Shown here: piece by piece, positions 21,201-51,200 of the stretch | How the letters are laid out: each line of letters opens with the position of its first letter | How positions within the stretch are numbered: the stretch's first letter is position 1 | Assembly: GCA_965649765.1 (NCBI GenBank) | Contig: OZ287749.1 | Coordinates: 7,564,001 to 7,628,000 of the forward strand | Reading direction: 5' to 3' | DNA from: Bispira polyomma | Taxonomy: Eukaryota | DNA: 64,000 bases | Notes under the pieces: model-generated | What the model was told of the DNA's origin: nothing | The model's database searches: none | What the model saw: the letters and a program-made list of their open reading frames with translations, nothing else | Program-made: the position numbers and the translations under genes

Positions 21201-24200
21201 ATCCTAGATAAACTCAATCAACAGCGTCAAAGGAACTGTAAGCACAAATCTAGCTTATCTGTCTCAAAAAATTCCTGTTTAGTGAGTTTTTGTAAGTCAT
21301 TGATATTGATCCATATGTACCGTCTGTCTGTTGTTACTATCTATATGACTCTGTTTACACTTCTAGGAGTTACTACCAACAAAACAAGAAGGCGACTCCA
21401 AGGTAACACACGTAAAGTCACTGGCCGAGAAAACCGTGTCGCACACAGCGCCACCTGGTCAGCAGCAGATCCGTCGTGAGCTGGAGACCTTGAACTTTGA
21501 CTGGCAGAAGTACTGTAGTGAGCTGAAGGACGCGGAGTCTGGACTACAGGGGGCGTTAGAGGGCTGGAATGAGTACGATGAGCTGTACGACTCGCTTAAC
21601 AAGTGGCTCACTGACTTGGAGGGGGAAGTGAAGAATTACGAACTGAAGTCCTCACTGGGGGACAAACAAGGACAAGTCGTCAAGTATAAGGTGAGGGGTC
21701 GAGGGTGAGGGATGTAAGGGTGTAATATAGGGCTGAGTGACTTAGAGGGGGAAGTGAAGGATTATGAACTGAGTCATCACTGGGGGACAAACAGGGACAA
21801 GATGTCAAGTATAAGGTGAGGGGTGGTCAGATATAGGGTGTGAGGTCATCAAATGTAAGGTGATAGGTCGTCAGATGTACGGTGAGAGGTAGGGAGCGGG
21901 CGAGGGGGTCAGGGTGTAATATAGGGCTAAGTGACTGAGAGCGAGAAGTAAAGGATTCAGCCTGAAGTCGTTTAAACACAGACAAGTTGTCAAGTAGAAA
22001 GTTAGACATTGTTAAATATAAGGTGAGAGGTTGTTAAATATAAGGTGAGAGGTCGTCAAATGTAAGGTGAGAGGTCGTCAAATGTAAGGAGCAGGCTGGG
22101 GGTTTGGGGGTGAGGGTGTGAAATGGGGCTAACTGACTTCGAGGAGAAAGTGAAGGATTACAAACTAAAGTCGTTGAAACACGGACAGGTTGTCAAATAT
22201 AAGGTGAGAGGTCGTTAGTTATAAGGAGGTCAAATATAAGGTGAGAGGTCGTTAGATATAAGGAAGTCAAATATATGGTGGGGATTAGGGTGTAACATAG
22301 GACTGACTGACTTAGAGAGGAAGTGAGGGACTAGGGGTTAAGTCGTCACTGGGGGAGATACGGGCAAGTCATCAAATATAAGGTGGGTAGTCCTTAAATA
22401 TATGAGGTGATGGGTTGTCAGATATAAGGAGAGGGTAGGGGCAAACAATGGTGGGGGTCAAGGGTATATGAGGTGAGGAGATGTCCGATATAAGGTGAGG
22501 GTAGGGGCAGACGGTGGTGGGAGATAAGGGTGTATGAGGTGAGGGTAGGGGCAGACAGTAGTGGAGACAAGGCTGTAACATAGCAGTGTACAGACGGATA
22601 TATATATGTTGTTGTTGTATTGGAGATTAGATGTCCTTCAGTTTGCTTTTAAATGTGTTTTTAGTTTGCTGATATATTTGTTGGAATCAATTCGGGTGCA
22701 GGGATATTAACAAAATAAAAGTAGAATGATAAAAACTTCAAAACAAACACAATTTGATAATGAATACATTTTGTAATTACGTTTCTCTCCTGAATGAAAA
22801 CTTTGTTTCAAATTTGGTACTTTTTCTAGTCCTGTCTACTTGTCAGACTTACGCATATTGCCTTATTACACATGTACAGACACATACATCTACAGACACT
22901 TGCTGCTTCCTCAAATGTAAACACCTACATCCGCCAGTGGACTCGTTTACATTTGTGCATCTCAGACCCTCTCTCTGATAAGGTGTTCTACTGTACACTA
23001 TGCATGTGTTGACTTTCTAGTTTTGTTGACGTTTACTCTCTGGTAGGGCTGTTAAAGAGTTCTCGAGGTACTCGTTAAAAAAAGTTTTTTTCCTGACTCA
23101 TAGGTTCAAGTTTGACTTTTAAATAGGCAGTAGAAATTTTACCTATTTTAATCCATTAATGACCATGATTATTAACACCATTGATGACACCATTTCAATT
23201 TAGAGAAACCATGTCTGTTGACGCATTGGCAACACCAATCTATTGCAGTTTCCATGTCACTCGGTTTGTGTTGGAGTGTTTAATATGGTTTCTATGAAGT
23301 ATAGCGGGATAGATATGGTTTCTACAAACTATAGTGAGACTACTGTATGCAGGAGTAAATTTTGAAGACTATCATTCTATAATCTTTGTAGTATATTGAT
23401 TAAATCTCAACGATAGTGTTTACAAAATAAAGCTAAATATGGCCGTTTCTGTAGTTTACCACAAAAAATTAAGCTAAATAAGGCTGTTTCTGTAGTTTAC
23501 AGCAAACTATTCCCTGTGTCGTGAAGGATTAAGCAAGACTCACTTCAGAGGCCGTATTCACAAACATTTCTGGACTACAAATTCTTTGAAACATTGTTTT
23601 TAGCCAGTAAAATTGATTGAGACAAAAATTTGAAGACTAAGAATGTTTGAATACCAGCCCAGGTCTTTGGTGTTTTTAACACCCTGGAGAGAGAAATCCT
23701 TTAAGATATAAGGGTTCCAAGATTTGACTCGAATACTAAACTCACTACTCATTTTTCAGCCCTACAAAACAAGACACAAATTCATGTCTCTCTCTATCTT
23801 TATATATATTTGTACATGTACATCTGGGTGTGGTATGTGTGTGTGTGTTACCTAGGAGATAGATCATGTGATCAGGGCCAAGCAGTCTCAGTTTGACAGC
23901 TTAAACGTGAAAACGACAGTGATTCCCACCAGTCCCCGCCAGGCGGCAGCACTAGAGGTGCCCAGTGTGCGCACATTAGGGAGCGTGATGGCCTACAGGG
24001 TTGGTTGTTTACACTGAGTGGCATGGGCGTGGTTTTGGACGTAAAAACTAATGTGTGTGTTCTGTCGTTTTTTACCCACTCGAGTTTTGCCCTGAGTCCC
24101 TTTCCAACCATGTGTTATTGTGTAGATTCCGTTGTGTAGATTTGGTTGTCTAGTTCGTAAATGTTAATTTTGTGTAGGTTTATAGTAGAAGTGTGACAGA

Positions 24201-27200
24201 TACCAAAAATTAGGCCAGAGTAACCACAAACGTCTAACCTTCTCGATGTGCGTACCCGCATATTTAGTGTGAACCAAAATCCGGAAAACCGGTATGGCAA
24301 TATTGCGGCTGATGTATACAAAAAAAATTAGGCCAAAATTATTGTTTTTATGAAGAAAACATGTCAGACAGGTTATATCTATTAGTTTTCAAAGAGGTTT
24401 CAAATCCTCAAATATTATCAATTACAAAACATGCCACTGTGTGCTGATTACTGGTTACCCATTCACAGCCCTAGTTTATAGTCCGATATCACCTCTCTAT
24501 AAGATCTCAGTTGACTTTACAATTTGCAAAGAGCCTTTAAATTTGTAGATTTTTGGTGGAGAAAATAAATTGATCAATTTAGTTACATGTTAAACACTGA
24601 ATTCCTCGATCACTTAATATTTTGTTATGACCTCTGTAGCAATAGGCTGTTGTTATTAGAGTCAGTCTTAGTCACTGTTACGTGCATTTAGTCTGAAAAT
24701 AGATAGATCCAGTATCACCAGAAACACCCTACCCGTTTATTTAGTTTTTTTATGAGCGAGTCTAGCAAGGCTGTCTTGGTTTTAACGACATAAGTTAACA
24801 ATTTCTCCTTGTGTCAAACATGACAATCCCTGGTGATATATACTCTATATTAGACTCGAGTGGGTAAAAGCTCCACAGAAAGCTACTAACCGTTATTGTT
24901 TTTTATTTACTTTAGATGACAGGTGCTTTTTTGGAATATATTTGTTTCTGCCAGCGCCCCTTGCTGCCCTCCAACCATTTCCAGTATACCTCTTAAACTC
25001 TCTCTCCACAGTGAACAAATTTGTACCTGTGGCCGTATTCTCGAAAAAAATCCCCAAACTCCGACTCAACTCTTGAGTTTTTGCTCAGTTGCTATGGTGA
25101 CACACTCAGATTTTAGTTGAGATTAAATCTCAACTGTTTGTATTCTCCAATATTTTGAGTTGAGATTTTTCCCTCAACTCAAGCTCAAAGTTGAGCAAGG
25201 CTGTACCTGACTTAACTGTAATAAGAGCTGAAATAAAAATATGTTCGAGAATACCAAATAAGGAAAAAAGCTCAACTGAGCCAAAATCTTAGGCTTGAAC
25301 CTAAGTTTGGGTTTGAGTGGGTTTTTCTCGAGAATACTGCCGCTGAATCACAACCTCTTCATATGATCGTGTGTCACATTTCAATAAATAGTAACCATTT
25401 TAAAGCTTTGGTGGCTGATTCAAGCTTTCTTTTAAAATGTATAGTTTGATTTCTTTGCACTGAGAATTTGTGAAAAAAAATTATTGTGAAGATAGAATTT
25501 TGTAATTGTGGGAAAAAAATTAATTATTAGATATCCTTCGAGAAAAATTGAAATGTCACTCCAAATATATCGTAAAATGCTGAGGTTTCCGCATAAACTC
25601 ATAGAAATGATTAATTTATTTGGGTTTGGGGTAATGTTATACTTTTTTTTTAAATACTTAAATATGAAGAACGTTTTCTTTTGGTGGTGAATACTTGGAG
25701 AGGTGTACTGGAAATCAATACCATTTAATAATTTCAGTTTTTTCCAAAAAAATATTTCCGATTTTATCATAATATGCCATTTTTGTATGTATTCATTTCA
25801 GGTTTGTTTCCTATAATAACATTTTATGCACATATTTTACTTTACACACTGAATTGAACTGTTTTGTTTTTGTACACACACATTTTCTGTTTAGTTGTAG
25901 TTTGTTGCTTTATTTTATATTTGTGAATATTTTTCTGTGAAATCAATTAGTATTATGAATAAAGTTATAATGCATATTTTACTTGTTTTAGAAAATTGTA
26001 AAGATTCCAATATTTTTCAGATGATAATGAAATAACAAGTTCAAATAGTAGATAAGTTTCTAATTGCATCTACTTTGTGTGAAGAGAAATTAATTGATTT
26101 TGAGAATTAATTGTGATTGTTGTTCATGTATTTATATGTTTGTTTGCTTTATCACCAAAAAGTTATGCAGTAGATAAATCTTCTATATTGCGAAATTGTG
26201 AATTTTGTTCATACAATAGTGTCTTCAAAAAAAAAACCCAGTTTATCTGATGTTTGGATAACTAGAAATTCATTTAATAGAGGTTACCTGGAATGAGATG
26301 TTGTGGTTTTGTTATGCAGCCCTTTAAGGACATATATTGTCTTTTAACAGAGCCCCAGTTAGGACATGCATACTTTGTTATGGGGCCCCTTTATAGACAT
26401 CCATACTTTTGTCGTTCACACCTTTATCTCATTATATCAAGTAGTCTCATTCCAACAACTTAATTATCTCATCCCCACAAGATAGCAATGAGATGATTAT
26501 GTAATTATAGCAAGATAAATAAGTTTTTTTACCAAGATAAATTTTTGTTTATAACAAGGTAATTGAATATTTTTATTTCATGCCCTCTTTTTCCCAGTTA
26601 TTGTATCTACTGGAAAACTCTGGTGGATACTATGGATTAGTCATCGTTACACCGCTGCCGCCACCATGTCAGTGTGTGTAGAGATTTTACCGTTCTCCTG
26701 GGAAAACTTTTACACATAGGCTCCTGAAATTTACAGGAGGTTCTTTCTCTTACAAAAGCTTGCCTGTAAGTTATTTTGGCCTCACTTTGACAGAGAAGAT
26801 GGCCGCCACAGGCGTTTCTTTCAAAATAATCAGGCTTTTAACCGTGTCTGTTTCTCAGGTGTAGAAGGTTGAATCTCTTTACGGGTGATATGTGTAACAG
26901 ATATATATGTCCTTTATAAGCATGCAGACATTTGACCTTGAATCTCGCTTATTATTCGTCGTAGAGGTTTGGGATATGAAACCAACCTATAGGAAATCAT
27001 GGGCTACTAATCTTTTGCTGTAGTCAGATTTGACCTTGGATCCCTCATGCAAGGTCAAACGGGTAGGCCAAACTTTGAAGTGCCTATCTCACACTTATTG
27101 GTCCCACCTGTTTGCAATGTGAAACTCACTTGTTTTAGCATGAATGCCCTATAGGAAATCATAGGGTCCTAGCTTGGGTGCTAGCTAGGGTGCTTGCTAC

Positions 27201-30200
27201 CTAGGGTGATTTGTCTTTCTGGTGGATACAAATCTGCTTCGGTTCTCTGATATGCCAGATCTAGTTTCCTTATAGAAAGATACACCAGGACAGATTTTGA
27301 GGTTATTATGATTTTCAAGTTTAAGACTTCAGGGCCTGTGTTCAATGAGCGACTTAGCCAAGTCTTAGGCGTAAATCTAGCACAATAGTATACTGATTTA
27401 AGCCTAAGACTTGGCTAAGTCCCTTCGTAAATAAGGGCCTTTATAAACAATGACCACTGGTGATTTCTACTAGTACATTCAATGATTGCAGAGATTGGTC
27501 GCCTAGTGGTTAGAAGCATCAGCTTCATAATCACTGGCCTCACACCAATCTAGGTTTGAATCATATTTCTTCCTTCATGTGACAAAGTTTGTCAGGCACT
27601 TGCCATAGGACGGTGGATTTTTTTACCATTAAACCTGGCCGTCACAATATGACCTAAGCTGTTGAAAATGTAAAACCCAACTAAATTTAAATTTATTTTC
27701 ATTTCATATGGAGATGCATTTCTAAAATCTGTTAGATTCGCTTAGATTATGATAACCTAAGACCAATGATAATATAGTAATATTAATATAGTTAAATAGG
27801 TGCTATAAAAATTAATAATTTCTATTAGATTGTGTAAAATGGTCCATACATACAATAATATTGCAGAGTCAACCATCTCTTCAATATCACTGCTGTAAAT
27901 TGGGTAGCTAAATAGATTTCAAGATCTTTAAAAACTCTTCTAACTATTTCGGTTGACTATTTTGTACAAAACTTTTGATTTCACGCTCTTACTGTTGGCT
28001 CTCTGGGTGTGTTTCTTGTACTTGATGTTCTATTGGAGTTCCTGTGTGTGTATAAATGTTTTGCTGATATTTCACATATGTATCTGTATATAAATGGAAA
28101 GAAAAGTTCAAGTGAATTTAGACAGATGTACATACATATTTTTGTATTAACAATGTTTATTTTGACAAAGTTATGTTCGAATTTTCAATTTAATGAACAG
28201 TGGTCAAGTTGATTTATTGTTTAAGTTGCATTGTGTTTGAGCAGCAAAGTACATTCTTTTTTTTTACATTTACATGGTGTATTGTTTGGGGTTTGTTAAC
28301 AATCACACCTAAAGGTACTAGTATCGCCCTGACACCACAGAATTACATAAAAATCAACTGTTTATCAATTACTTGCAGGCGATGCAGCAAGATCTAGCCA
28401 GCCGTCAGCCTGATGTAGAAAACATCGGCGTGAAGGCCCAACATCTACAGGCAGCAGAGTCCAAGATGTCTGCCGGTACCTCTCAGTTAAATGCCAGGTA
28501 CCAGGCTCTCAGAATCACCATAAAGGTAGGTACTCTATCTCTCTAAAATATATTTTCTCTAAAGCATTTTAAATAAATATGACGTTGGAAAAGATGCACC
28601 TTATGTTTAAGGTTACATTAAACTCAATGATAATCTTATGAATGTCATGCAATTATTACACTTTGTGTCCATAATTACTTCCCTGTCTTTTCAGTTGTCT
28701 TAAGTTTATAGATTTGTATAATTTGTCTAAAAGGGTTATCAAAGATTTAACTAATCTCTAATAACTTCAAAGTTAAGACGGTCTATGTCATTAGTAATAA
28801 TTAAGCCATATTAAAAAGCGTGATACCTCTAGTGATAGAAAATGATGCCTGATGCTGTTATAGAATGTGCTGAAAGTAGTCTAAGGTGCTTGTGAAGTTT
28901 TAAACAATTTTTTTTAGTTGGGTGCAGTTAAATATTTATAAAATGAAAGTGTGAGTATAAGACTGTTGTACATTGAGGTGCTTCAAGTTAATTGATTAAA
29001 TTTAGAAAAAAAAACAACCCTCAAACTATTCCGATAATTAAAGTCTTCTGACTGTTGTACAATTGTGCTTTGTACAGGACATGATTCAGAAGTGGGAGCG
29101 TCTTGCATCAGAACACGAAGCCTACACCTCGCAGTACGCTGCCGCCACCAAGTGGCTGAATGAGTTAAGTAAGAAAGTACAGGGGTGCGACGATGTGAGT
29201 GGGGAGCAGCGCGTGGTGGAGGAGAGACAGGGTCACCTACAGGAAGTGATCCTAGAGAAGGAAGATGGGGCGCCGCGGGTACACAGAGCCCTGGAGAGCG
29301 GGGAAAAACTCTACCCTAATACAGCCAGTGAGGGACGAGAGATCATTAGACAGGAGCTCAGGTGGGTCTTAAGGAGGGTGTGTGTGAGAGGGGAGGGGAA
29401 CTCTACCCCAATACAGCCAGGGAGAGAGGTTGCGGGTGGGGATGGGGAGGGGGGGGGGACGAGGTATTAGTGGTCTGTTAGGATTTCATTAAAATTCCCT
29501 ACAATGGATCACATGTGTAAGATCGTGTATCTTGCTTATAAAGATAGTTACGGAAATACATTCTAAAATAATCCTAGAAATCTTTGAATCCTAAACAGTG
29601 ATGCTTTATATCATAGACAGTAACATAAAAGCACACTACTACATTGGTGTCCTCAGTCTTCTATAAACAGTTGTTACTGTTGTCATGGTTTTAGGGGTCT
29701 GCGTGAGAAGTGGGAGGGAGTCACAGACGCCCTGTCAGACACACAGAGACAGCTGGAGGTCTGCCTCGGACAACTTAGCTCTTTTGAGGACAGTCGGGAA
29801 CAGTTCTCCAAGTGGCTGACTGACACTGAGGTCAAAGTCAAATTACAGGCTGACCTCAAGGCGACCTTGCAGGAAAAGAAAGTACAGGCACAAAGCCACA
29901 AGGTTAGTAAATCAAGGTCAAGGTCAAACTACAGGCTGACCTTGTGGACACTTAACACAGGAGAAGACAGTAGAGGGTATTTACCACAGTGTAGGTCAAG
30001 GTCACCTTACAGGAGAGAAAAATACAGACACAGAGCCACAAAATGAGTAGTAAAGGTCAAGGTTACACTACAGCCTGACCACAAGGTCACTTTACAGGAG
30101 ATATATGTACTGGTAACAGCTAAGGCCCGCCCACAGTTAAGGCTCACCCTGAATAGAATTGTGAATATCTCTAAAAACCATTGTTATTTGTGTTATTTGA

Positions 30201-33200: not shown

Positions 33201-36200
33201 TGAAGGACACACTGGCTGAGAAACGGGGACAGCTACAGGGACAGAAGGTAAGGGGGTGGGGCAGAGAGAGGGGGCTTAGAGGGTGGGCTAATGGTTGAAA
33301 GAGATGGAGGAGGGTCTAGTGAAGGAGATCTGGAGCTGAAGGATAACGGAGACAGCTACAGGGACAGAAGGTAACGGGGTGGGGAAGAGAGGGTGGGGCA
33401 TAGAAGGGGAGGGGGGTAGTGGCTGAGTGAGATGGAGGGTCTAGTGAAGGGAGATTTGGACAGGGACAGAAGGTAAGGGAAAGGGGCAATGATAAGGGGG
33501 TTGGGGCAGGGATACAGGGGTGGGGAAAAATAGGGGTGGGGCTAAGATAGAGGGGTAGAGCAGAGATAGGGTGGGGTAAGATAGAGGGCAGAGATAGAGG
33601 GTGTCGGTATAGGAATAGGGGGTGGGGCATGTCTAGACAACAGGAATAGAAAGTAAGGGGATGGGGAATGAGCACAGATATAGGGGAGTGAGCACAGGTC
33701 ACAGTGCGGTTAGGCACAGGTAGGGGTATAAGATAAGGGTGCAAATAGAGAGATAGAAAATCAGAGGGCTGGGTAGAATATTTACAGTTAAGGGTCGGGG
33801 ATTAGGCTGCGGTTGCACTGAATGAGTGTTAGGAGTGGGATAATTGTGTCCATGTAAGGGGTCCGAGATAGAAGTATTACATTTTAGATTATTTTTAGAT
33901 TACAAATACTGTCATATACTACTTAATGAGTTGTTGTCTGTGACTATGGTAACTGTTTCCATGCTGTTGTTTCCAGGGTTACTTACATGACATCAGTTCA
34001 CATAGCCGTGCTGTGGAGTCTGTTGTAGAAAAGGCTCAGTCCTTGTTACAAACCTCCACAAGCGGGGCGGTCACACAGGTTGCCCAGGAAACCTCCTCCA
34101 GATACAACGCACTGATGGACAAAACCAGGGTAAGTCTGTTTGATTAGATATGTATGTGTGTTTGTCTCTGCTTTAATGATGGTGGCCTTTTTCACACACT
34201 CAGGAATTTGACACAAAGTGCACCATATTGCCTTGGCAACTGAAATAACTGGTGCATCTTCAAGTTTATAGAAATATTTGTTTGTTGTATGTACAAACAA
34301 TGTGTTCTTTCAAAGTCAAACAATCCTATTATGTGGTAACATGCAATGCTCTCTAGTTTGTATAATCTGGTAAGTGCATCCTTCCACTCTGACATGATGT
34401 GTATTTCCCCCCTTTATTACAGGAGTATATCGTGGAGTGTGAGAGGCGCGTGTCTGAGCATGCTCAGTACACAGAGACTCACCAGGTGGCGCTCGAGTGG
34501 CTTGCACTGATGAGCGACAGGCTCCAGATGTGTACAGATGTCGGCGGAGACAAACACGCAGTGTCTAACAGACTGGATAGGGTCAAGGTTAGTGCAGGAA
34601 CTCTGTGTGTAGGGATATTGGTGAAGTCAAGGTCACTGCATGAACTCTGTGGATGGGGGTGTTGTAATGGGAGGCAGTGTCAAGGTCACTTAATATTAAA
34701 TTTAAAAAAAAAAAAAACAAACCCTGTCCCAATAGCCTTCACTTTGTAGATGTTTTACTATACATCCTATCTGTAAAAGCTATAAGACTTAAGAAACAAT
34801 AGGGGATGGTCTCAAGTATGAATGTAGGTTCGGTTTAAAAAAGATTTCTAAAACATTAACAATTAAGGATAGGTGGACTGTTATGAAAGCATTATGAAAG
34901 CCCATGACTGAGTCGGCAATGAGTTTGTTAAAGTGAACATTGCCATTAGTTCAGATGATTGAGTTTCTCCTGTGTATGTTTTCAGGATCTTCTGAGTAGT
35001 CGCCCCGAGGGGGAGACCAAACTAAAGCAGTGTGAGTCTGTATCAGAGAGTGTTCTACCCAACACTGGCCCCAACGGCAGGGACGTCATACAACAGGAAG
35101 TGGGTAGTCTGAGGGAGGGATGGACACAGTACTGTACAGACGTGGACGCTACACAGACAAACCTGGCTGCTGTAATGAAAAGGTGTGTGGGTGAGGGTGT
35201 GTGTGTATGGGTGTATGTCTGGGTGAGGGTGTGTGACGCTAAACTGGATATAAAACTAAATCTAAAATGCAACCAGTCCCAGTGTTGTGTTCTAAAATGC
35301 CCAACTCTTTATTTCTCATATTTTGAGGTTGAATGAGTGTGTGAGTGTCTGTGAGTTTGTGTGTGTTGTGTAAGTATAAATCTAACCAACCTAAATCCTC
35401 TGTCTCTTGTACTTCACTTGTCATAGGTGGAATGAGTACGAAGCCGCTTATGAAGAGTTACTGAACTGGGTCAAGGAGACAGAAAAGAAGGTCAAGGCTG
35501 TGACCTTAGTTGCGACCTTGGATGAAAAGAAGACTCAGGTTACCAAGTTCAAGGTCAGTGTATAAAGGTTTTGGTTCTCCTTTTCTCCACCGTGTGTGCA
35601 AATTATTTGATTTCACCGGGGGTGTGACGGGTGAGCACAAATGGGCCGTATGGTTAGTTTAAACCCATCTGAGGAGTTAGTTTAGCAACATGGGCGGCTG
35701 ATGTAAACAAAAGTATGTCAAAAAATTACAATTCTAACATAATTATGAGGAAAACGTATAATTATTTACTAAAATTAAACAATAATAATTTGTACTTTGA
35801 CAAAGTGTTTTGATCTGACATGTGATAATGTAATGAATTTTATGTTCATAATGTGCATGTTTTCGAGTAGTTTTCAAATAAATTGGGCCTATTATTGATT
35901 AACGGCAAACCCGGTTACACCCTTAAATAGCACCAGTTTAATTTTTTAATTAATAGATGTGAAGCAAATATACAACTTAATATGTGTGCAGCAAATGTGT
36001 AACTAAGAGATGAGAGACGAAGTAGTTTAGATTGCAATTCTTGCTTGTACTGTTTGCTGCAATGACCTCGATTTTGATTGGACGTTTTATAATTATGTGA
36101 CTGATCATATGACCACAGGAGCAGTACAAGTCAGTGGAGGAGTTTTCTGCCGATATTGACAAGTTCTCAGACATGGAGAATGTAAGGGGGACTTTGTCTG

Positions 36201-39200: not shown

Positions 39201-42200
39201 AGTATATCCAATATACATTTAATCCCTGTCAATTTTGGCTAAAGAATCTAGGTGACAAATCTAAAACTCTCACTTGTAAAGAAGAGCAATATCGGCATAT
39301 TTATTCACTACATTAAAAGCTTGGTTTGAAATGCCAGGTACTATTTTCATTCTTACATAGTGGTCTTGTTTGCCTAGTGGTTAAGGTTTGTCTTGGTGAT
39401 CAGAAAGTCCCTGTTTCTAATCCTGGTTGAAAGTCTTGGTCTGGTGATCAAAAGGTCACATAATATTATATACTATTACGTAGCTTAGTGGTTAGAGAGT
39501 CGGTCTAGTGATCAGAAAGTCCCTGGTTCACCCCTTAGGAATACTTCTAGGGTAGGATAACATCCTTGGGCAAGATGTGACCTCACCATTGCGTACTAAT
39601 GATGACCCAGGTTATGTTGTAGGACTATCCCTTTTAGAAAATGAGCGCGTTAGAGGATGTTCTCATCAATTTGGCACTTTGTAAGTGTTTCAATTATTAT
39701 TATTATTAAGATAATATATCACTAGGGTGCTATATAAATGATTCAATAATAATTATAGTAAAACAAACGATAATATATGAACGTTACAGGAACTACTACA
39801 AGACATCAAGTCTCGCCAGCAACAAGTGGATCTTGTTGCCGACAGAGCTCAGACCGTGTCCCAGGTTACTGCGGAAACCAGAGTAGCAACCTATGTGACC
39901 CAAGTGACAACCAGGTACCAGTCACTGCTTACAACTGCAAAGGTAGGAATTAGCTTTTATGTGTGTAGTTAACTCTCATATAATTTTAAAAAGACCCATA
40001 TAACAGGACGAATTAGCTGGCTATGGTACCCTTTACTATGTGAAGGGTAAAAGGGAGTTGTGCTCCTTACTGCTACTGTTAACCCCCCCTACTCTTACGA
40101 CCTTGCTATGCCAATAGTCTTTACCATTGGATTACCATCAATAAAGCGCATTAAAATGCATAATAATAAAAATAATTCTCTATTTTGCTGTTTTGGTGAA
40201 AATAAAAGGAAAATGGATGTCTGTATTCTTAGGATTTGACACTAACAGTCTTGGAGCATTTCATTTGTAGCAGTTTGGTTTGTGGTAGTGTTTTAAGGTG
40301 TTTACAAACTGTATGAAGTAGTTCAGAAAAGCCTGAATGATCAGCGCCGTAAAAAATATTTTTAGCCAATCAAATTGTGAAAATGAAAGAATAAGAATCT
40401 TTGTGAATACCAGCCCTGGTGTACATATTAAATGACAGGTGCGGCAAAATATTTCTTAGTTTATAAACTTATACCATAGCAGAGTTAAAAATTATATGTG
40501 ATGCCTGAGGTAGTTTGTGGTGTGTGTTTAAGAGACTTCAGCTGTGTGTAAACCCATTGCTGAAAAATTTCCTTTAGTTCTCGAAGGTAGGTTTCTCCTA
40601 CTTGTGAAATGATTGAAACAGTTTTGAGTTTGGTCAGCTTTTCAGTGTTGTTGACATTGTGTACTTCAGGACATTGTGAAGAAGTGTGAGCAGAATGTTG
40701 TAGAGCACGAGGATTATAAGGACAAGTATCAGACGGCAGCGAGATGGGTGGAGGGGGCTCGTGAAAGATACACCTCCTCTACTACACTGGGGAATACACG
40801 CACAGATGTACAGACTAAACAACACACTATACACGTAAGTAAGGGGGTAGTGAGGTCGGTAAAGGAGGGAGAGGTATACCTCCTCTACTAGGGAATACAC
40901 GGACTGATGTACAGACTAAACAACACACTATACACGTAAGTTGGATCGATCAATATCAAAATATTTGAATTTGGTTAGCTTTAAACTCTCGCCATTTAGT
41001 AAAACCTTCATGCCACTTCTGTAAACATGGCCGCAAACAAGTATTTCAAAGTGCGACAAATTGCTTTATTGCGATAACAGGACTTCGGTCCAGTTTGATA
41101 AATATTTTGATATGTACTATACCATACCCATACCTACATATCAGTATTGTCATAACCTCAAATGTATCTATACACAATTTTACAGGCTTTAGTACTGGTT
41201 TTGAGTGTATCAGTCAAGCTCTAGAGTCTATAGCAAGTTGACTGTTCACATACTAGTAGCGTCTGTATATAAGACCTAATCCCTGTGTACATATTTCAGC
41301 CTTTAGTCCAGGAGGAGGCTGGTTTTAGGAAGTTTTATAAGTCTTATAAAACGTTTGTTGTACTTGGATCAATATTGTATTTTACCTAAGATTTATCACT
41401 GTATACATTGTGAGTTAGTTTGAGATTGTTGGCAGTATTTTTAAGTCAATATAAGCCTTTTTTTGTCTGAGATATAATACTAGTTCACTGTATTCACTTT
41501 CCAGGCTTTAGTCCATGAGAAAGAGTCAGGCTTTGAGCGTGTCAGCCAAGCTCTAGAATCCGGAGACAAACTCTACCCTAGTACTTCTACAGAGGGCAGA
41601 GAGATCATACGTAACGAGTTACGCCGGCTAAAGACAGACTGGGACGGTCTCTATGATGATGTACTGAGTGTACAGCGCCATCTAGAGGTCAGTCTGGTGC
41701 AGTGGACGTCATTTGAGGACAGTTACGAGCAGCTGGAGGGATGGCTGGAGAATATGGAGGGTCAACTGGCAGGGGAGATACCATTACACGCTACACTGGA
41801 GGAAAAGAAGGGACAGTTACAGACTTATAGGGTGAGTGTACCAGGGGTGGGGTTAGAGGGGGGTGGTGTAGGGAGAGGGATGGCTGAGGAATATGGAGGG
41901 TCAAATGGCTGAGGAGTTGCCGGTACATGCTACATTGGAGGAGAACATGGGACAGTCTCAGATGGGTTGATGTGGCTGTACAAGGGGTAGAGGGTGGGGG
42001 TCAGGGTTTTGGTGAGGAGTGACGTTGGGGTAGGGGACTGTCGATCGAGGAGAAATGCATTGGGGGTGAGGTATTACTGGGAGATTGTGGGGGTTGGGGA
42101 AATGTACAGGGTGGGTTGGGGTCAAAGCATGGTTATTGTGATGGGAATTCCAGTCCAGTTAATGTCCAAATCTGTAGTCCTCTCAGTGTGTAAGTAGTAA

Positions 42201-45200
42201 ATATACCTTTAGTTTGTGGCTCAGATAGAATATAGTGTAAAGCCTGTAATGTCTAGGGATATTTGTTTAGTCTTTTTAGTATAACTCCACTTCTGGTTAT
42301 ATGTCTAACTGTGTCATTGATTATGTTCGAGTTAAACCTACTATTGACGTCATTAATGTATCTGTATATTACACAGAACCTTGCCCAAGACGTGACGTCC
42401 TACCAGCGTGTTATAGACGGAACCCTAGATAAAGCACAGAGTCTGGCCAAGACCAGTAGTGACCCCAAACTGTCTGAGAACATACAGAAACTGAACCAGA
42501 GATACAGGGCACTGTGTACACAGTCTAAGGTAACATAGCCACCAACAGTTTACAGAAATGAAAAGTACTGCAGGAAAAGTACATCTTCAAAGTTTAATAC
42601 ATTGGTTTATCATGGGTATAGCTTGCTTAAAATCAATTTTTGGCACATGATAATGTACATTTCTTAACCCAAAAAACCCATGTTCTGTTATTGATGACTG
42701 GCACAGAGTCCTCGCCATTTGTAGTCTTCGCTGATATTCCTACTATAATGTATTTTGATGTAAACATATCCATCTTTACTTGGTGTATGTAAGCAGTATT
42801 TACATGTGTATATTGTTTTTGTCATATACATGTGTGTGGTCTCTAGTGGCCTAGTAGTTAGGGAGTTGGTCTGGTGATCAGAAGGTCCCTGGTTCAACTT
42901 CCATTGGGGGAGTTGGTTCGGTGATCGGAAGATCCCCGGTTTGACTCCTGTAATGTCCCAGGTTCATTGGTGGGATAATATCGTGGAGCAAGATGTGAAC
43001 ACGCCATTGCCTTCTGATCTAGGCTATGTTGTAGGACACATGATTGGTTGATTGATTCGGTTGTTGCACTTTATACGATGCCTTGCATCAATAAAAGCAT
43101 GTTAAAAATATGTAATAGAATACAATAATAATCCATTGCCACCCCATGTTTCAGGAGCGTGTGAGTGTATATGAAGACATTGTGAAGGCTCAGCAGTCCT
43201 ACCAGAATGCGTTATCAGAGTGTCGGGAGTGGCTGAGTAACATGGAGGAGAGACTCCAAGTGTGTAGGGATATGGGAGGGGATAGACACACAGTACAGAA
43301 CAGACTGGATAGATTACAGGTAAGAGGGGGTGAGGGAGACTGTGGTGTGTGGGTGCTGGTAATATGGAGGAATGTAGGAGTGTGTAGGGATATGGGAGGC
43401 AATAGGCATACAGTACAGAACAGATTGGATAGATTATAGGTAAGATAATAGGGGTTTGTATGTGTGGGAGGGGGTTGGTAAAGGTGAGGGGGTGGGTGTT
43501 AGAGGTGGGGTAATATGGAGGAACATGTTACAGGTAAGATAGGGGGAGGTGGCATGCCAGGGTGAGTCACATACAGGAGAGACTCCCAAGTGTGTTAGGA
43601 CATGAACAGAGGGTGTGTGGTTTGTCGGAAGAGGGATGTTAGAGCAAGAGGTGGAATGGACAAGGGTAGGGTGAGGGGTGAGAGGGTGGGGCAATGGAAT
43701 GAGTCGGTGGGGCAAGGGGTGAGAGGGTGGGGCAATGGAATGAGTGGGTGGGGCAAGGGGTGAGAGGGTGGGGCAATGGAATGAGTCAGTGGGGCAAGGG
43801 GTGAGAGGGTGGGGCAATGGAATGAGTGGGTGGGGCAAGGGGTGAGAGGATGGGGCAATGGAATGAGTCGGTGGGGCAAGGGGTGAGAGGGTGGGGCAAT
43901 GGAATGAGTCGGTGGGGCAAGGGGTGAGAGGGTGGGGCAATGGAATGAGTCGGTGGGGCAAGGGGTGAGAGGGTGGGGCAATGGAATGTGTGGGGCAAGG
44001 GGATCAGGGGGTGAGTTGAGGATGTTAGTGGCTAGAATAATGGGGTGAGTGGGTCAACAAGGTGAGAGGGTGGGGCAATGTTGTGAGATCTAACATCAGG
44101 GTTTATGGATTAAGGGATAGAGTGCATCTTAAAAATTTCTTTTTAGTCAGTGAAATAATTTTGCCGATTTTTCTGCTTCTTAAATCTATCATTACTGACA
44201 GTGTGTGATTGTATGCTTTGTGCTTGTACCACCTGATTTGTGGCATGAACTGTCCCAAGAGTGTGTCATGATTAACTTCTTTTAATGATTATACTGTAAG
44301 AAGTACAGTCTGCATGTTCATGTATATGATTGAAACAATCACAAAATAATCCTGTTCAATTAAAATGTGAATTTCAAGGTATAAGTTGTATCCTCAAAGT
44401 TCATGTTGAAGGCATATGGTCTGACCCAAGTTTGACCTTGAAGCATGACCATGGTGGCCTCTTTTGTTAGAATTGCTTGTTTCACAATCACATGTCTCTC
44501 ACCGATGTGGGATTGTATGTTGATCATTCCTTCATGTGTGGGGAAGTTTTTTAGTTGCTTGCTGTAGTACGGTGGTTTACAGTGCTTCAGCACTGGTTTC
44601 TTCCACCATTGAATCTGCCATATGACCGAAGTTTTTGAAAGTCACATAAAACTCAACTAAATTCAAATGTTGTTTCCCTTGTATCTATGTCCAAAATCCT
44701 CATGGTTGGAAATAGGTTATTGTTACCTCCAATGGTATTTACCATGAACTTATGAATATATCTGTATAGGTGATCATTGTAGTTACCCTGTTTTGGACAG
44801 CCATGATTTAATTCATAATTTATGTAGTATGGTCATGCTTCATGTTTTCTGCGCTACGGGGTTTTCGGCGTACCGCATTAACTTTGTAGGTATTTTACAA
44901 TAAAAGTAATTTTATTATGTACGCCGAAAACCCCAACGATCATTATACCAGTATATTCATCAGTGTTACTTATATCACTTTTACAATGAACTATTTTGGG
45001 CAGATTATTTATTTATTTGATCAAAATAATCATACTAATGTCAAATTTGTAAAATATATTAATTTCTTACACAATAAAATTGTTGCAAAAATACTGATTA
45101 TTGTTTATTAACGTTCAGAGAACAATTACAGATTATAGCCATTGATTTAAGATGATTTATGTGCATGTGTTAATGGTGCCCCCCCTTGTTTTATCCCTCA

Positions 45201-48200
45201 TAGCGGAGATGTGTAAGTGTGGTGTATAAATGTGTACCATGCACCTTGTGTCTCTCTGTGTACATAGCTTTGTGGAGAAACACCCCACGCTTTGTATTCA
45301 AAATCTATTGAATTTTGAATCCCCCAATATTTCAAAACTGACGAAAATGTGTTTGTTGCATAAAGATCTTCTACTGACGAGCTCAGTAGAACTTCTACTA
45401 TCTGGACAAGTTGGGAAGAGCTAAATTTTATTAGGATGATAGAACATTCATAAAATAGAAGTTGTATTGTAGAAGAAAACAATAGGAAAACAAAGTTGGG
45501 AGAGTGAAATGGTGTACTACATATTTTAACATCAGATATTTGGCTAATAGAAGTTTGGATAATGGGGGTTCTACAATAATATCTGTAACAATTACTGAAG
45601 ATTTGATTTTCACAATATTGACTCATTGAATTGGACGGCCACTGATTCCCTGTTATATATAAAGATTACAGTGTGTGATCAATGAATAACGTCATGGTAA
45701 CAGCTGTTGGAAGATTTTAAATGGCATTATTTTCTTGATCTAATTGTAATAATTCCTCTATGTATTAACAAACTGCCTCCTGTTTGCAATGTTTTAATCC
45801 TGGAATTACTATGGTTACTGACATACTAATATTTCTGCAATGTGTGTTGTTTTATAATAAACACACCCTCTGGATTTGAAGTGTTGCACCTATGTAAGCT
45901 TTCAAAGTATACTGACTTTTCTTGAGGAACTGTTTGTCCTCAATAGGGCTGCAATAGGTAGGAAAGACCGGAATATTTGAGTACTCTTATAACTAAAACT
46001 GATTGACTCGAGTATTCATGGGGTTTAGTATGTACCTATGACAAGTATTTAGTCAACTTTGGAGGAAAAAAAAAATTACCAGATATTGTAAAGTGTACAA
46101 TGAGTTGTTGATCATTATTGGATCAAAAATCTCCCATAGTTTGATGCTATTGGGCCAAAATGAGTACACACAGAAGGCATTTTAAGCAGCATTGCGATAA
46201 CGCAATTTTTTCAAGAAATCGAGAGTTTGAGACATTTTATGGAATCACACTTATTGTCTCAAATGTTCGGGGGAAAACTATATCAGATACTAATTGCCTT
46301 AGAGACCGGTGGTTTACACTATGAAAGAGAGATTTGTCCATAGTACAGGGGCGATATTCACATGTCTTAACTTTGTCTTAGCTTAAGATTTTGGTCTTTG
46401 ATTTTGGCCGCAAAGGTTAAGATTTTTGGTCTTAATCCAGTGACAGTAAGAAAAGATTGTTGGTTAGTGATAACTTTGCACCAACAGCCACTGGATTCCC
46501 CAAAAATAAATCTGGCCATCCCTTTAGAACACCAGATGTTGAAAAATTAGGTAAAATCCCAAATAAATTGAAACTTAAAATAGTTATGCATGTTAGTTAA
46601 TTTGTTCCACCAGCACACTCGGGAAAATTAATGCCAAATAATTTCAGTAAAACCTTGAAAGAGTGTGTAATTGTACATAAAAGATGGGAGTGAATCAATT
46701 GCATGTACCAATGTTGTATGAATTACCCATTAACAAGTTAACAACTCTGTACAGAAAATATTGTTGTAAATATTAACAGTAGTAAAACGTTGGACGGGTA
46801 ATATGAACGGATTCATTTATATTCATTTATATTTATTTAAAGATATTAATATTTTGATTAAGTGATTTCTCTGTACCAGTTAATATCACAAAATCACCAG
46901 TAAAGAGCTTATGTAACTGATTTCTATGGTTTGTTTTTGATCGATTTACATCTTTCACATTTAATGATCCAGTGTCCTTGTACTGTAAGTGTATATCTTC
47001 ACTATTACGTTATACATGTTCTCATATGTTAACATACATTCTTAACTGATAAAATTGTTGTTTGATTTCAATTTTTAATCATGACTGATTTTCTTGTTAA
47101 AATTTTCTCTAAAAACCAAAGATTTGTTTGAACTAAATTTTAACATTATTTACCTCTATAAACTTTACCTTTTTCATGGTTAATACACTAAAATATTAGA
47201 GAATTACATAAATTTATTCCATTATTTGGTGATGGGTTTATAATATGCTTAGCTATACAATTATATTTATTGCATGTATAGAAGTTATGTATGGAAGTTA
47301 CCTGAAAGCTTACAAAGATGTTGACATTTCATTAACAGGATATTAGGAAAGCCCAAAGCGAAGGGGAACCACGAATCAATGATGTCATAGTTCAGAGTGA
47401 GGCTGTCCTCCCTAATACAGCAGCAAGGGGGCAGGAGCTTATTGTGAGGGAGACCGAACAAGTAAAGACTGATTGGCAGGAACTGATGAATGGATTGGAA
47501 GAGGTAAGGATGAAACTGACCAGTCTATACTTTGTGACCTAGCGGCAAGAGTATTTGACTTTGGATCAGAGGGTCCCAGGTTCAATGCTCACTGCTGGCC
47601 TGGTGATTATACTCTTGGACACTTCACACCAAGTTACTTGTCTCTACCCAGGTGTATAAATTGGTATCTGGCTGCTAGTGGGTGTTAGTCTTTGTGCGCC
47701 GTATGTGGCAGCACGGCTAATATGCTTCCTGAGGGAGCTGATACTGAACAATTGGTTGGCAAGTAGTCAGATGAGGCCTCATCATGTGTGATATCAGACT
47801 ATAAACCTACATTGACTTGTCTGTGGAGTGACCACTGTTATAAACTGACCATTCTGTTCTTGTACTTGTAGACTGAGGAACAGCTGACCCTGTGTGTTCA
47901 GCAGTGGATTGATTATGAGGAGATCAGTGAGCGCGTGGGTGGCTGGCTGAAAGATGTGGACACTGAACTGAGAACCGTGGAACTCTGTGGTACATTACAA
48001 GAAAAACACCAGAGATTGCAGCATATTAAGGTAGGACCTGTGTGTTAACAGAGAAATGGGGAATGTTACAGTGTTAAGGTCGAAATTACATCATATTAAA
48101 GTAGTAACTCTGTGTCATTTTACAGAAACAGAAGCAGAAATTATTTGCTAAAAATTACAAATATGTCAAGATTTGTCAAGCTATATATATCTAAAAGCTC

Positions 48201-51200
48201 ATTGTACAATTTTCAAGCAGAGTAGGCCTAATTATATTAATCTGTGTACAATGTTTAGGCAATCCCAGCCTATTGTATTAATATGTGTACACTTTTTCAG
48301 GCAATCCACGATGATCTGAACACTCGTCAGGCAGAACTAGACGAGTTAACAGACAAGTGTCAGGCACTAGCTCGGACCTCAGGGGACACCAGACTGACCT
48401 CTCAGGCTAGTCAACTCAGTACCAAGTACCAGTCACTGGAACTCAGTGTCAAGGTTAGTAACAAAGGTCACAGGGGTTAATTGATAAACACTCAGTGTCA
48501 AGGTCAGTCAACCCAGTACCAGGTACCAGTCACTGACACTCAGTGTCATGCTCAGTCACCAAGGTCACTGACGTTAAATTGTAAACACTCGGTGTCAAGG
48601 TCAGTTACCAAACTCACAGGGGTTAAATAGTAAACATAAGTTCTAGGTCATTATCAGATGCGTGGTTGTACGGATTCTGTAATTGCAAATGTATGATATT
48701 TTCGGTGACCATAGTGTGAAGTATTGTTTTTGTAAGAACAGAACATGTTTATTTGCTGTTAGGGCACAAGCCTCTTGCACATACATATACATAAAAATAA
48801 CTAACAAAAAGAACATACTCAATATTTGATTAGCACATCATATATGTCATTTTAATAACAAAAATAAGTGCTTCAAAGAACATCAATTGTAATCATTAAG
48901 TAGTAAACTGTCAGTTAAATTTAAATTACACTTTAACCTCTATTATTCAAAATTCTATTACCTGAATATTGAATTCTTAGAACTTGTTTTCAGTCTGTTA
49001 AATTTAGTTATTTCTGTTGTTATACAGGAGCTGGTGCGTAGGTGGGAGCAGTATGTGTTGGATCATGAGAAGTATGAGGACGCTTACCACAACTGTTCTG
49101 AGTGGCAGAAAGATCAGGCCAGTAAACTGAGATCTTGTACCTCAACAGAGGGGGATAGGGTCACACTGAACAACAGGCTGAGTAAACTACAGGTATTAAG
49201 ATTTTAAGATTTTGATTATCATTTAACTTAGCCCCTTACAATTTGATCTGATAAAAAAATAAACACTAAAAAAAAGTGTGATAATGAAATTTGTTTCTTT
49301 TCACACTTTTTTTCTCGATTTTCCAGGAAGTTCTCCAAAACAAAGAAGAGGGTTAGTCCTCCCTTTAGCAAGCTATGCACGCGACCCACTTAGTACAGAC
49401 AGTAATTCTCTCACTGCTTTCCAACTTTCCAGGAAGGTCTCTAGAACAAAGAAGAAAGGTTACTCCTCCCAGCAGCTAAGCACTTGGTGGTGTAATGGTT
49501 AACAAACTTGCCTCACACCTCTGGGGTGGTGGGTTTCGAATCTTGGCTGCGACTTTATGTGGGAAAGTTGGCTGTAACTTACCCAGTGGTTTATAGTGCA
49601 GAATATTGACCAACTAATATACACTGCCCCCACCAATGAAATTACCCGTCAGTGATATGACCTATACAATGTGTTGAAAGTGACGTTAAAACCCATAACC
49701 AGATCAAATTACAGTCAGTAATTACTCGTTTTCTAACTTTCCAGGAAGTCCTCCAGAACAAAGAGCAGGGTTACTCCTCCCTCCAGCAAGCTGTGGACGC
49801 GGCCCACTTAGTACAGCCCAGCACGTCTGCCCCGGGTAAGGACCACATCGCGGAGGATCTGCAGGGCTTACGTCAGGACTGGGAGGACATGATTTCACTG
49901 ATGAGCGGTGGAAAGTCCCGCCTAGAAACGGCCCTCACCCACTGGGATCACCATGATGACACAGTGACGGCACTTAACAAGTGGCTCACGGACATGGAGG
50001 ACAACCTAAAGCAGGAGAGTGCACTCCAGGCCACCTTGTCTGAGAAAAGGTCACAGCTAGAGAGGGTCAAGGTCAGTACTCAATCTGCAAGCTGCACTTT
50101 ATAAATTATCTGTCTTTTTGTGATTGCACCGATTTCATTTTTATTGTGGCACCAATTTTAAGCGAGAACACATTTATTGTGTATATCTAAAAATATTAAT
50201 ACCGGAGTATGTTTAAGGGGGTTGCCGACATCATAGGACACTGTATATTTTGGGTACTGTCGGAAAGGCTTAGTGCTCTGAAAAAATGATTAATCTGTCT
50301 TTATTTTCATTAAGTCTGACTTCATACTTACAAAGTTAGGCACTTTTGTGACGAAAAAAATTGCCATCTTAAACTTTTTCTGCTGTGATCTGTCACAGCA
50401 ATATAATAGTAAAGATATACATTTTATATCCCGTGCTGTATTGCATATCAAAACATCCTATTTCATGGCCGGGTGGATAAGAAAACAATTTACTTGTTGA
50501 TGGCCTCCCCTTCCTTTAAATTGTGGGCAACAGCTTGTATGTATTCAATGTTTTCTAGAGTTAGATATTTCTAACAGTAACTGGAATCTAAGTGTTTTGC
50601 TATCATTGTTTTCTGACTAATATTTTATGATACACTTCTGTAATAATGCACTGTTATAAAGACTCTAATAAAAGTACTTTATTCTCTTTATTTCAAGCAC
50701 CACTAATAAATATTGTAGTAACCGTTTTCTTGCGTCACACACTTTTCTGGTAGAGTAGAATTTGTATTTCTTTTTTGAACGAAAAGTCAATAAGACTATA
50801 AACCTGTAGGATTTGAACCTGTATAAACATGTATGAACCAGATGTAATTCATAGAATTACGTCAGTGAAAAAGTGTTGTATTGTGGAAATAACTTGTTGT
50901 ATCTGTTGCATTCATTGTGTCATCTCTATATTAATTATAATAACTGATTAATATTAAGTTCTAACTTTAGAAAATAATCAATGTGTTTAGGGTGCAAAGC
51001 GTAGCGTTTCCCTACAGGAGTCAACTGTACAGGAAGTCACGGACACGGCAAGTCTCACTTCACCCCTTCATTATAGCTTTGCCTCCTGTTTATACAGCCT
51101 AATCCCTGCTTATATCAATACATTGTTAACACACACACACATGAAATGACTGTTGGTCAAATTTTATGAAAATCTGAAGATTATACATTTAAATTGATGT

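What the first reader, a model, noticed from the sequence alone, without database searches (positions are those of the whole stretch)
23856..51047. Ladder of three hidden half-exons that are in-register paralogs of the next helix-B exon: alternative exits or mutually exclusive exons
Three of the four longest introns (after exons 23, 34 and 44) sit at the same structural position, after the ..TLxEKxxQxxxxK loop. Each hides a phase-0, 3n exon whose first ~19 aa align without gaps to the next constitutive exon: EIDHVIRAKQSQFDSLNVK vs AMQQDLASRQPDVENIGVK; EQYKSVEEFSADIDKFSDM vs ELLQDIKSRQQQVDLVADR; GAKRSVSLQESTVQEVTDT vs IQSVKVSSQQATVTAANER. They are diverged at the DNA level but stop-free, unlike the recent echoes. 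Each is followed by a candidate acceptor giving an early stop and an AATAAA. Inference: a modular switch that caps the rod mid-repeat, giving a length series of KASH-less isoforms, or that breaks the repeat to make a hinge. Alternative 3' ends are established for vertebrate SYNE1, but this repeated half-helix design is unusual.
Basis: partly seen in the sequence, partly recalled or inferred. Interest (0 to 1): 0.85.

Follow-up and report, generated by a model that had tools for sequence, protein, structure and literature searches.

The report
Conserved hidden exons in invertebrate nesprin
A giant nucleus-to-cytoskeleton linker gene (nesprin) of an invertebrate hides four small optional exons, kept across distant species and all inserted at the same mid-helix point of its repeats, which probably let cells bend or lengthen the protein rod locally rather than cut it short.

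Summary
The three hidden exons are real. They rank 1-3 of 635 intronic candidates against a helix-B profile, and orthologous introns of other animals keep them with both splice sites. h1 is 144 nt, not 57 (4/4 genomes; dN 0.05, dS 0.66). h2 is 63 nt (6/6). h3 is 57 nt with a GC donor, found only in the close relative (2/6). The fourth long intron hides a 9-nt microexon (6/6). The gene is a CH-spectrin-KASH nesprin/MSP-300 orthologue. The insertion point is mid-helix B, not a loop, and only h1 is closest to the next exon. The 'stop + AATAAA exit' idea fails for h2 and h3: no conserved acceptor, and AATAAA is absent in several orthologous introns. Only h1 is followed by conserved orphan acceptors and an RNA stem. 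Best reading: regulated in-frame internal exons that lengthen or hinge single repeats (cassette about 0.5; h1 perhaps mutually exclusive). No RNA data were available, so splice partners are unproven. A conserved giant KASH-less terminal exon lies 24 kb downstream. The scan had noted these exons only on this same window.

The parts
21367..21690 (+). constitutive exon ending mid-helix B (phase 0), upstream of h1
23856..23999 (+). h1: 144-nt alternative exon; full-length diverged duplicate of the next exon (helix-B start, Pro/Ser-rich middle, conserved R-x-L-x-x-V-M-x-R end); weak invariant donor GTTGGT
   Evidence: conserved in L004:7397, L005:1353 (141 nt), L008:9989; dN 0.051, dS 0.66 vs L008
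24882..24995 (+). single-copy non-coding block: TACTAAC branch point (24884) and orphan acceptor CAG|GT at 24922/24923; substitutions not coding-like
   Evidence: conserved in L008:17699-17792
24977..24994 (+). 5' arm of a conserved long-range RNA stem
   Evidence: 18 bp here, 16 bp in L008; score 40 against at most 23 for the other 221 block pairs
25359..25460 (+). conserved non-coding block inside the stem's loop; its AATAAA (25383) is not conserved in place
25698..25715 (+). 3' arm of the conserved RNA stem
25781..25834 (+). second conserved pyrimidine tract and acceptor-like CAG|GTT (25801/25802); stop after 4-5 codons in both species
28379..28525 (+). c1: constitutive helix-B/C exon, 147 nt
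35427..35553 (+). constitutive exon upstream of h2
36119..36181 (+). h2: 63-nt (21 aa, three heptads) alternative exon, GT donor, conserved branch-point region
   Evidence: same length and donor position in L028:15609, L001:4910, L002:2246, L003:4405, L004:12933
39790..39942 (+). c2: constitutive helix-B/C exon
45204..45212 (+). 9-nt microexon (R/Q-R/K-C) at the equivalent mid-helix-B boundary of the other repeat type
   Evidence: exactly one pattern match, in the orthologous intron, in every genome that covers it; none on reverse strands
49745..50071 (+). constitutive exon upstream of h3
50991..51047 (+). h3: 57-nt alternative exon with conserved GC donor (GCAAGT); lineage-restricted
   Evidence: conserved in L010:11203 (dN 0.26, dS 0.62); no intron or only a ~95-nt intron in four distant genomes
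53611..53763 (+). c3: constitutive helix-B/C exon

Best explanation
The window is the regular double-spectrin-repeat rod of an invertebrate nesprin (MSP-300 orthologue), whose introns fall at a fixed phase-0 point 12 residues into helix B. Tandem duplication of helix-B exons into those introns, followed by divergence and (h2, h3) truncation at new donors, gave optional in-frame exons; a 9-nt microexon uses the same point. Most likely they are tissue-regulated cassette exons spliced in front of the next constitutive exon of an otherwise intact transcript. h2 continues helix B by exactly three heptads and keeps the hydrophobic register. The microexon adds about one turn. h3 adds 19 residues out of heptad phase. 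h1 adds, or swaps in, a helix-Pro/Ser-linker segment like a dystrophin hinge. The effect is to lengthen, stagger or soften single repeats, tuning rod length and compliance, not to end the protein. Shown: the exons exist and are conserved with both splice sites, purifying selection on h1, register, structural position. Inferred: inclusion, downstream partner, tissue control, mechanical effect.
For: Both splice sites and 3n length are conserved in 4/4 (h1), 6/6 (h2), 6/6 (microexon) and 2/6 (h3) genomes while the introns are otherwise unalignable. Weak or non-canonical donors are conserved (GTTGGT, GCAAGT), and synonymous divergence is lower than in neighbouring exons (dS about 0.6 against 0.9 to saturated); both are typical of regulated alternative exons (general knowledge). 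Flanking introns stay 1-2 kb even where other introns are about 100 nt. GCATG (Rbfox motif) occurs 24 times against 10.2 +/- 3.1 expected in the 300-nt flanks (the loci are not all independent). h2 length is invariant at 21 aa. No conserved acceptor or poly(A) site follows h2, h3 or the microexon. No docking/selector stem links h flanks to c flanks, and all exons are 3n, so nonsense-mediated decay cannot enforce exclusivity. Human nesprin-1 has a PCR-verified 47-aa Ser/Pro-rich cassette exon inside a repeat (exon 93; PMC3388047).
Against: No junction was observed: the only runs holding this DNA are genomic, and no fetched protein contains any of the exons. h1 has the length and both ends of a mutually exclusive duplicate. 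h1 is followed by conserved orphan acceptors and a stem that a plain cassette model does not need. h3's 19 aa breaks heptad phase.
Confidence: 0.5

Rival explanations
1. Mutually exclusive substitution: each h exon replaces the following constitutive exon. h1 swaps an intact B/C segment for a Pro-rich hinge; h2 and h3 delete about 30 residues and leave a two-helix repeat.
For: h1 is 47-48 aa against 49 for c1, has the same phase, scores best against the c1 family, and keeps the helix-C-end Arg at -9 and Arg/Lys at 0. AlphaFold predicts helix only at residues 2-15 and 27-30, with pLDDT falling to about 52 in the C-terminal half.
Against: By the criteria in PMC3228551 (length difference at most 20 aa, score at least 15%), h1 scores 2-8.5% and h2/h3 differ by 30-32 aa. 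There is no steric, frame or RNA-structure mechanism to enforce exclusivity. Plausible for h1 (about 0.35) and less so for the others.
Confidence: 0.2
2. Long-range exits: the small exons finish helix B and splice tens of kb to a shared phase-0 acceptor, such as the giant Ser/Pro/Arg-rich terminal exon at G000:C2:7652428-7656273. This would give a series of KASH-less CH-rod-tail isoforms of different rod length.
For: That terminal exon exists, has a phase-0 acceptor at the same mid-helix-B position, ends in a stop, and is conserved (70% in the close relative; weak hits in the same gene position in two distant contigs). h2 and h3 stop 6-8 residues before the end of helix B, as a cap would.
Against: The giant exon already has an adjacent phase-0 donor (window-equivalent 76841) and a conserved ATG exon in its own intron. 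No conserved complementarity links h flanks to the conserved blocks before it. Skipping 20-40 exons would be needed.
Confidence: 0.13
3. Local alternative last exons: each h exon splices to a nearby acceptor with a stop and poly(A) site, or reads through its weak donor, truncating the rod.
For: After h1 there is a single-copy conserved branch point and acceptor (24884, 24923), a second acceptor (25802) with a stop after 4-5 codons in both species, UTR-like conserved blocks and a conserved stem; no conserved donor follows. For h1 alone the probability is about 0.3.
Against: Nothing comparable follows h2, h3 or the microexon. AATAAA is absent downstream in L028, L001 and L003 (h2), L010 (h3) and L005 (h1). 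The blocks are not detectable in distant genomes. A 6-kb mobile element sits between h1 and the blocks in the relative, which argues against read-through into a continuous 3' UTR.
Confidence: 0.14
4. Unused relics of old exon duplications.
For: No transcript evidence was found.
Against: Frame, length and both splice sites are conserved across genomes whose constitutive exons are only about 45-60% identical in protein; dN/dS is about 0.08 for h1.
Confidence: 0.03

Closest known systems
Human nesprin-1 (SYNE1) cassette exons 93 (47 aa) and 6', and nesprin-2 exon 107' (23 aa) (PMC3388047)
   Same: Small in-frame optional exons in a CH-spectrin-KASH nesprin; exon 93 adds a Ser/Pro-rich 47-aa piece to a rod repeat. 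Alternative 3' ends also occur.
   Different: The exons here are recognisable duplicates of helix-B exons, in register, at one recurring repeat position. No homology to exon 93 was tested or is claimed.
Drosophila Msp300 isoforms (PMC8616381)
   Same: Orthologous gene family with 11 postulated isoforms, internal starts, four poly(A) signals, a few alternative coding exons and KASH-less forms.
   Different: The fly's regular repeat region is largely one giant exon (4400-aa genomic ORFs), so these introns are missing there; no matching insertions were found in fly proteins.
Mutually exclusive exons from tandem exon duplication (criteria in PMC3228551)
   Same: Adjacent paralogous exon in the same phase; h1 has nearly the same length as its neighbour.
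   Different: Similarity is below the cut-off, h2 and h3 are truncated, and no competing RNA structures were found.
Neural/muscle microexons (own knowledge)
   Same: 9-nt frame-preserving exon, strong GTAAGT donor, deep conservation.
   Different: Tissue and regulator untested; an upstream UGC motif is seen in only some genomes.
Dystrophin proline-rich hinges (own knowledge)
   Same: h1 would place a Pro/Ser-rich break in a spectrin rod.
   Different: Here it is optional and lies inside a repeat, not constitutive between repeats.

Membership tests
Nesprin-1/MSP-300 family (host gene) | N-terminal CH domain on the same strand | tested here: met
   PF00307 match at C2:7536356, + strand, 28 kb upstream; the exons in between were not modelled
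Nesprin-1/MSP-300 family (host gene) | Spectrin-repeat rod | tested here: met
   PF25034 over cut-off for two exons; helical repeat model of an orthologue, pLDDT 90; named relatives are nesprin-1-like
Nesprin-1/MSP-300 family (host gene) | C-terminal KASH domain | tested here: met
   PF10541, E 7e-21, C2:7752177, + strand; rod-like exons continue up to it
Functional alternative coding exon | Conserved splice sites, frame and purifying selection | tested here: met
   (h3 in two genomes only, dN/dS about 0.4)
Functional alternative coding exon | Junction reads showing inclusion and skipping | not testable with these tools
   only genomic runs hold the DNA
Cassette exon | Joined to both flanking constitutive exons | not testable with these tools
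   no RNA; inferred from lack of alternatives
Mutually exclusive exon pair | Length within 20 aa and same phase | tested here: inconclusive
   met for h1; not met for h2 and h3
Mutually exclusive exon pair | Similarity score at least 15% of self score | tested here: not met
   h1 2-8.5%; h2 and h3 negative
Mutually exclusive exon pair | Enforcing mechanism (steric, frame/NMD, docking-selector pairing) | tested here: not met
   kb spacing, all exons 3n, no conserved pairing with c flanks
Alternative last exon series | Conserved downstream acceptor with stop after each exon | tested here: not met
   present only after h1, in the close relative
Alternative last exon series | Conserved poly(A) signal | tested here: not met
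   AATAAA at chance density and absent in several orthologous introns

The most novel reading that the evidence does not exclude
The four small exons are regulated exits that finish helix B and splice over 37-64 kb to one shared giant disordered terminal exon, so one gene makes a quantised length series of actin-binding rods with a common tail: a spliced molecular ruler, for example for muscle lattices.
Probability: 0.13. Interest if true: 0.85.

Novelty: new variant of a known kind. Interest (0 to 1): 0.5.

Why it matters
Alternative splicing of nesprins is known, but I found no paper in the held library (six searches) on a conserved set of helix-B-derived partial duplicates and a microexon all placed at one mid-helix point of the repeat. 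It gives a natural series of 3, 19, 21 and 48-residue perturbations at the same structural site, with which to test how spectrin repeats tolerate mid-helix insertions and how cells tune linker mechanics. None of the fetched proteins, including named database entries, carries these exons. If the exons are long-range exits instead, it would be a new way to set the length of a giant protein.

Tried and rejected
RNA evidence: the three runs found were genomic (contigs cover introns evenly). Search for h peptides or mid-helix insertions in about 200 fetched proteins: none. The h1 profile search found only the close relative's genomic ORF; the ESM Atlas gave no hit at 0.9 or above. Rfam: nothing in 21691-53700. 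The KVLVT-stop terminal exon after h2 and the 12-nt CPCT microexon (46973) are not conserved. No docking/selector pairing between h flanks and c flanks or the giant exon's intron was found; the only conserved duplex is the stem after h1 (an energy-based version timed out). The conserved blocks after h1 are single copy, so they are not repeats.
Full report
Observation. The six peptides are at the stated places, in phase 0 after AG. A 43-exon model of 14016-63059 is stop-free over 3111 codons. The four longest introns are 6688, 4236, 4019 and 3539 nt; the next is 1109. Against a profile of 13 constitutive helix-B exon starts, the three hidden segments rank first, second and third among 635 intronic AG+57-nt frames and beat all 1191 reverse-strand controls. 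Their scores are positive only in zero register. They are not chance.

The gene. Exons hit PF25034. A CH match lies 28 kb upstream and a KASH match 124 kb downstream on the same strand, and named relatives are nesprin-1-like. It is a nesprin/MSP-300 orthologue in a 1.04-Gb animal genome, probably a lophotrochozoan (inference from a snail hit at about 50% identity). An AlphaFold model of an orthologous stretch that lacks the h3 intron puts the boundary at residues 218|219 inside helix 207-226, followed by helix 228-245. The insertion point is therefore 12 residues into helix B, not a loop.

Conservation. Orthologous genomic regions came from five other genomes: four distant (exons about 45-60% identical in protein) and one close (about 80%, introns unalignable). 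h1 is a 48-aa exon ending at 23999. It recurs in all three other genomes that cover the intron, always ending at G|GTTGGT; against the close relative dN is 0.051 and dS 0.66. h2 is 63 nt with a GT donor at the same base in six of six genomes. h3 is 57 nt with a GC donor in both this genome and the close relative; two distant genomes have no intron there and two have about 95 nt, so h3 is lineage-restricted. The remaining long intron holds a 9-nt microexon at 45204-45212, found once, in the orthologous intron, in six of six genomes. All four long introns thus hide a conserved 3n exon at a mid-helix-B boundary.

Origin. h1 scores best against the family of its neighbour c1 and keeps the Arg at -9 and the basic last residue shared by all helix-B/C exons, so it is a full-length diverged duplicate whose middle became Pro/Ser-rich. 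AlphaFold gives a confident helix only for its first 15 residues. h2 and h3 are generic helix-B paralogs; their neighbours rank 4th and 5th of 13.

Where do they splice? This could not be observed. The only runs holding the DNA are genomic, and no fetched protein carries the exons. The joined-model search and fold were left out. Indirect tests follow. Local exits: AATAAA occurs at 1.24 per kb in these introns and is absent downstream of h2 in three of six genomes, of h3 in the relative and of h1 in one genome. No acceptor is conserved after h2, h3 or the microexon. After h1, however, four single-copy non-coding blocks are conserved with the close relative: a TACTAAC branch point with acceptor at 24923, a UTR-like block, a second acceptor at 25802, and a 16-18-bp stem (24977-24994 with 25698-25715) that far outscores 221 other block pairs. 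These may be a last exon, a splicing-regulatory RNA bridge or recursive splice points (both acceptors are followed by GT); they remain unexplained. Mutual exclusion: h1 fits by length but not by similarity, h2 and h3 fit neither, and no enforcing mechanism is visible (PMC3228551). Cassette use: all exons are 3n, donors are weak but conserved, synonymous sites are slowed, flanks are enriched in GCATG (24 against 10.2 +/- 3.1), and h2's invariant 21 residues are three heptads, which keeps the hydrophobic stripe continuous into c2 (sequence reading). Human nesprin-1 has a verified 47-aa Ser/Pro-rich cassette inside a repeat (PMC3388047).

A true KASH-less exit exists further on. A 3846-nt phase-0 exon at C2:7652428-7656273 encodes 1281 Ser/Pro/Arg-rich residues and a stop. 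It lies in a 21-kb intron at the same mid-helix-B position and is conserved (70% in the close relative; weak hits in the same gene position in two distant contigs). It has its own adjacent phase-0 donor and a conserved short ATG exon in front, so it does not need the h exons. Long-range splicing of the h exons to it is not excluded, but no pairing signal supports it.

Verdict. These are real, conserved alternative exons of an invertebrate nesprin. The best reading is in-frame cassettes that lengthen or hinge single repeats (0.5); rivals are mutual exclusion (0.2, mainly h1), local last exons (0.14, h1 only), long-range exits (0.13) and relics (0.03). Alternative splicing of nesprins and Msp300 is known (PMC3388047, PMC8616381); this recurring mid-helix design was not found in six literature searches. 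It is a new variant of a known kind, interest 0.5.

Noticed in passing
G000:C2:7652428-7656273 (L013:4428-8273): Giant 1281-aa Ser/Pro/Arg-rich alternative terminal exon with a stop, in a 21-kb intron; conserved; would give a KASH-less isoform.
   Followed up: partly
G000:C2:7651003-7651044 (L013:3003-3044): Conserved 42-nt ATG exon (begins MAGLKGILR) with a phase-0 donor, 1.4 kb before the giant exon; with five other conserved blocks it suggests an internal start making a short, rod-less product.
   Followed up: partly
window 24882-25834: Chain of conserved single-copy non-coding blocks with a branch point, two orphan acceptors and a 16-18-bp long-range stem; function unexplained.
   Followed up: partly
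window 46973-46984: 12-nt CPCT microexon candidate; not conserved in any relative.
   Followed up: yes
window 21700-22560, 18916-19140, 43327-43444, 54411-54637: Tandem 'echo' copies of exon 3' ends with their donors; the close relative has similar echo arrays after the same exons (L010, L028).
   Followed up: no
L008:10712-16940: About 6-kb mobile element with a tyrosine-recombinase-like ORF and inverted ends, inserted just after h1 in both haplotypes of the close relative.
   Followed up: partly
G000:C2:7684765-7698600: Three further long low-complexity ORFs (455, 801, 1096 codons) inside the nesprin gene, probably large non-repeat or alternative exons.
   Followed up: no
G000:C2:7720500-7724700: Retroelement with reverse transcriptase-like ORFs (DIRS-like by appearance) in an intron of the gene.
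   Followed up: no
G000:C10:9790263 and C2:44503759: Two other KASH-domain matches in the genome.
   Followed up: no
L001:15115-15126: Possible 12-nt microexon (RCLI) in a 1.4-kb intron of a distant relative that is short in this genome.
   Followed up: no
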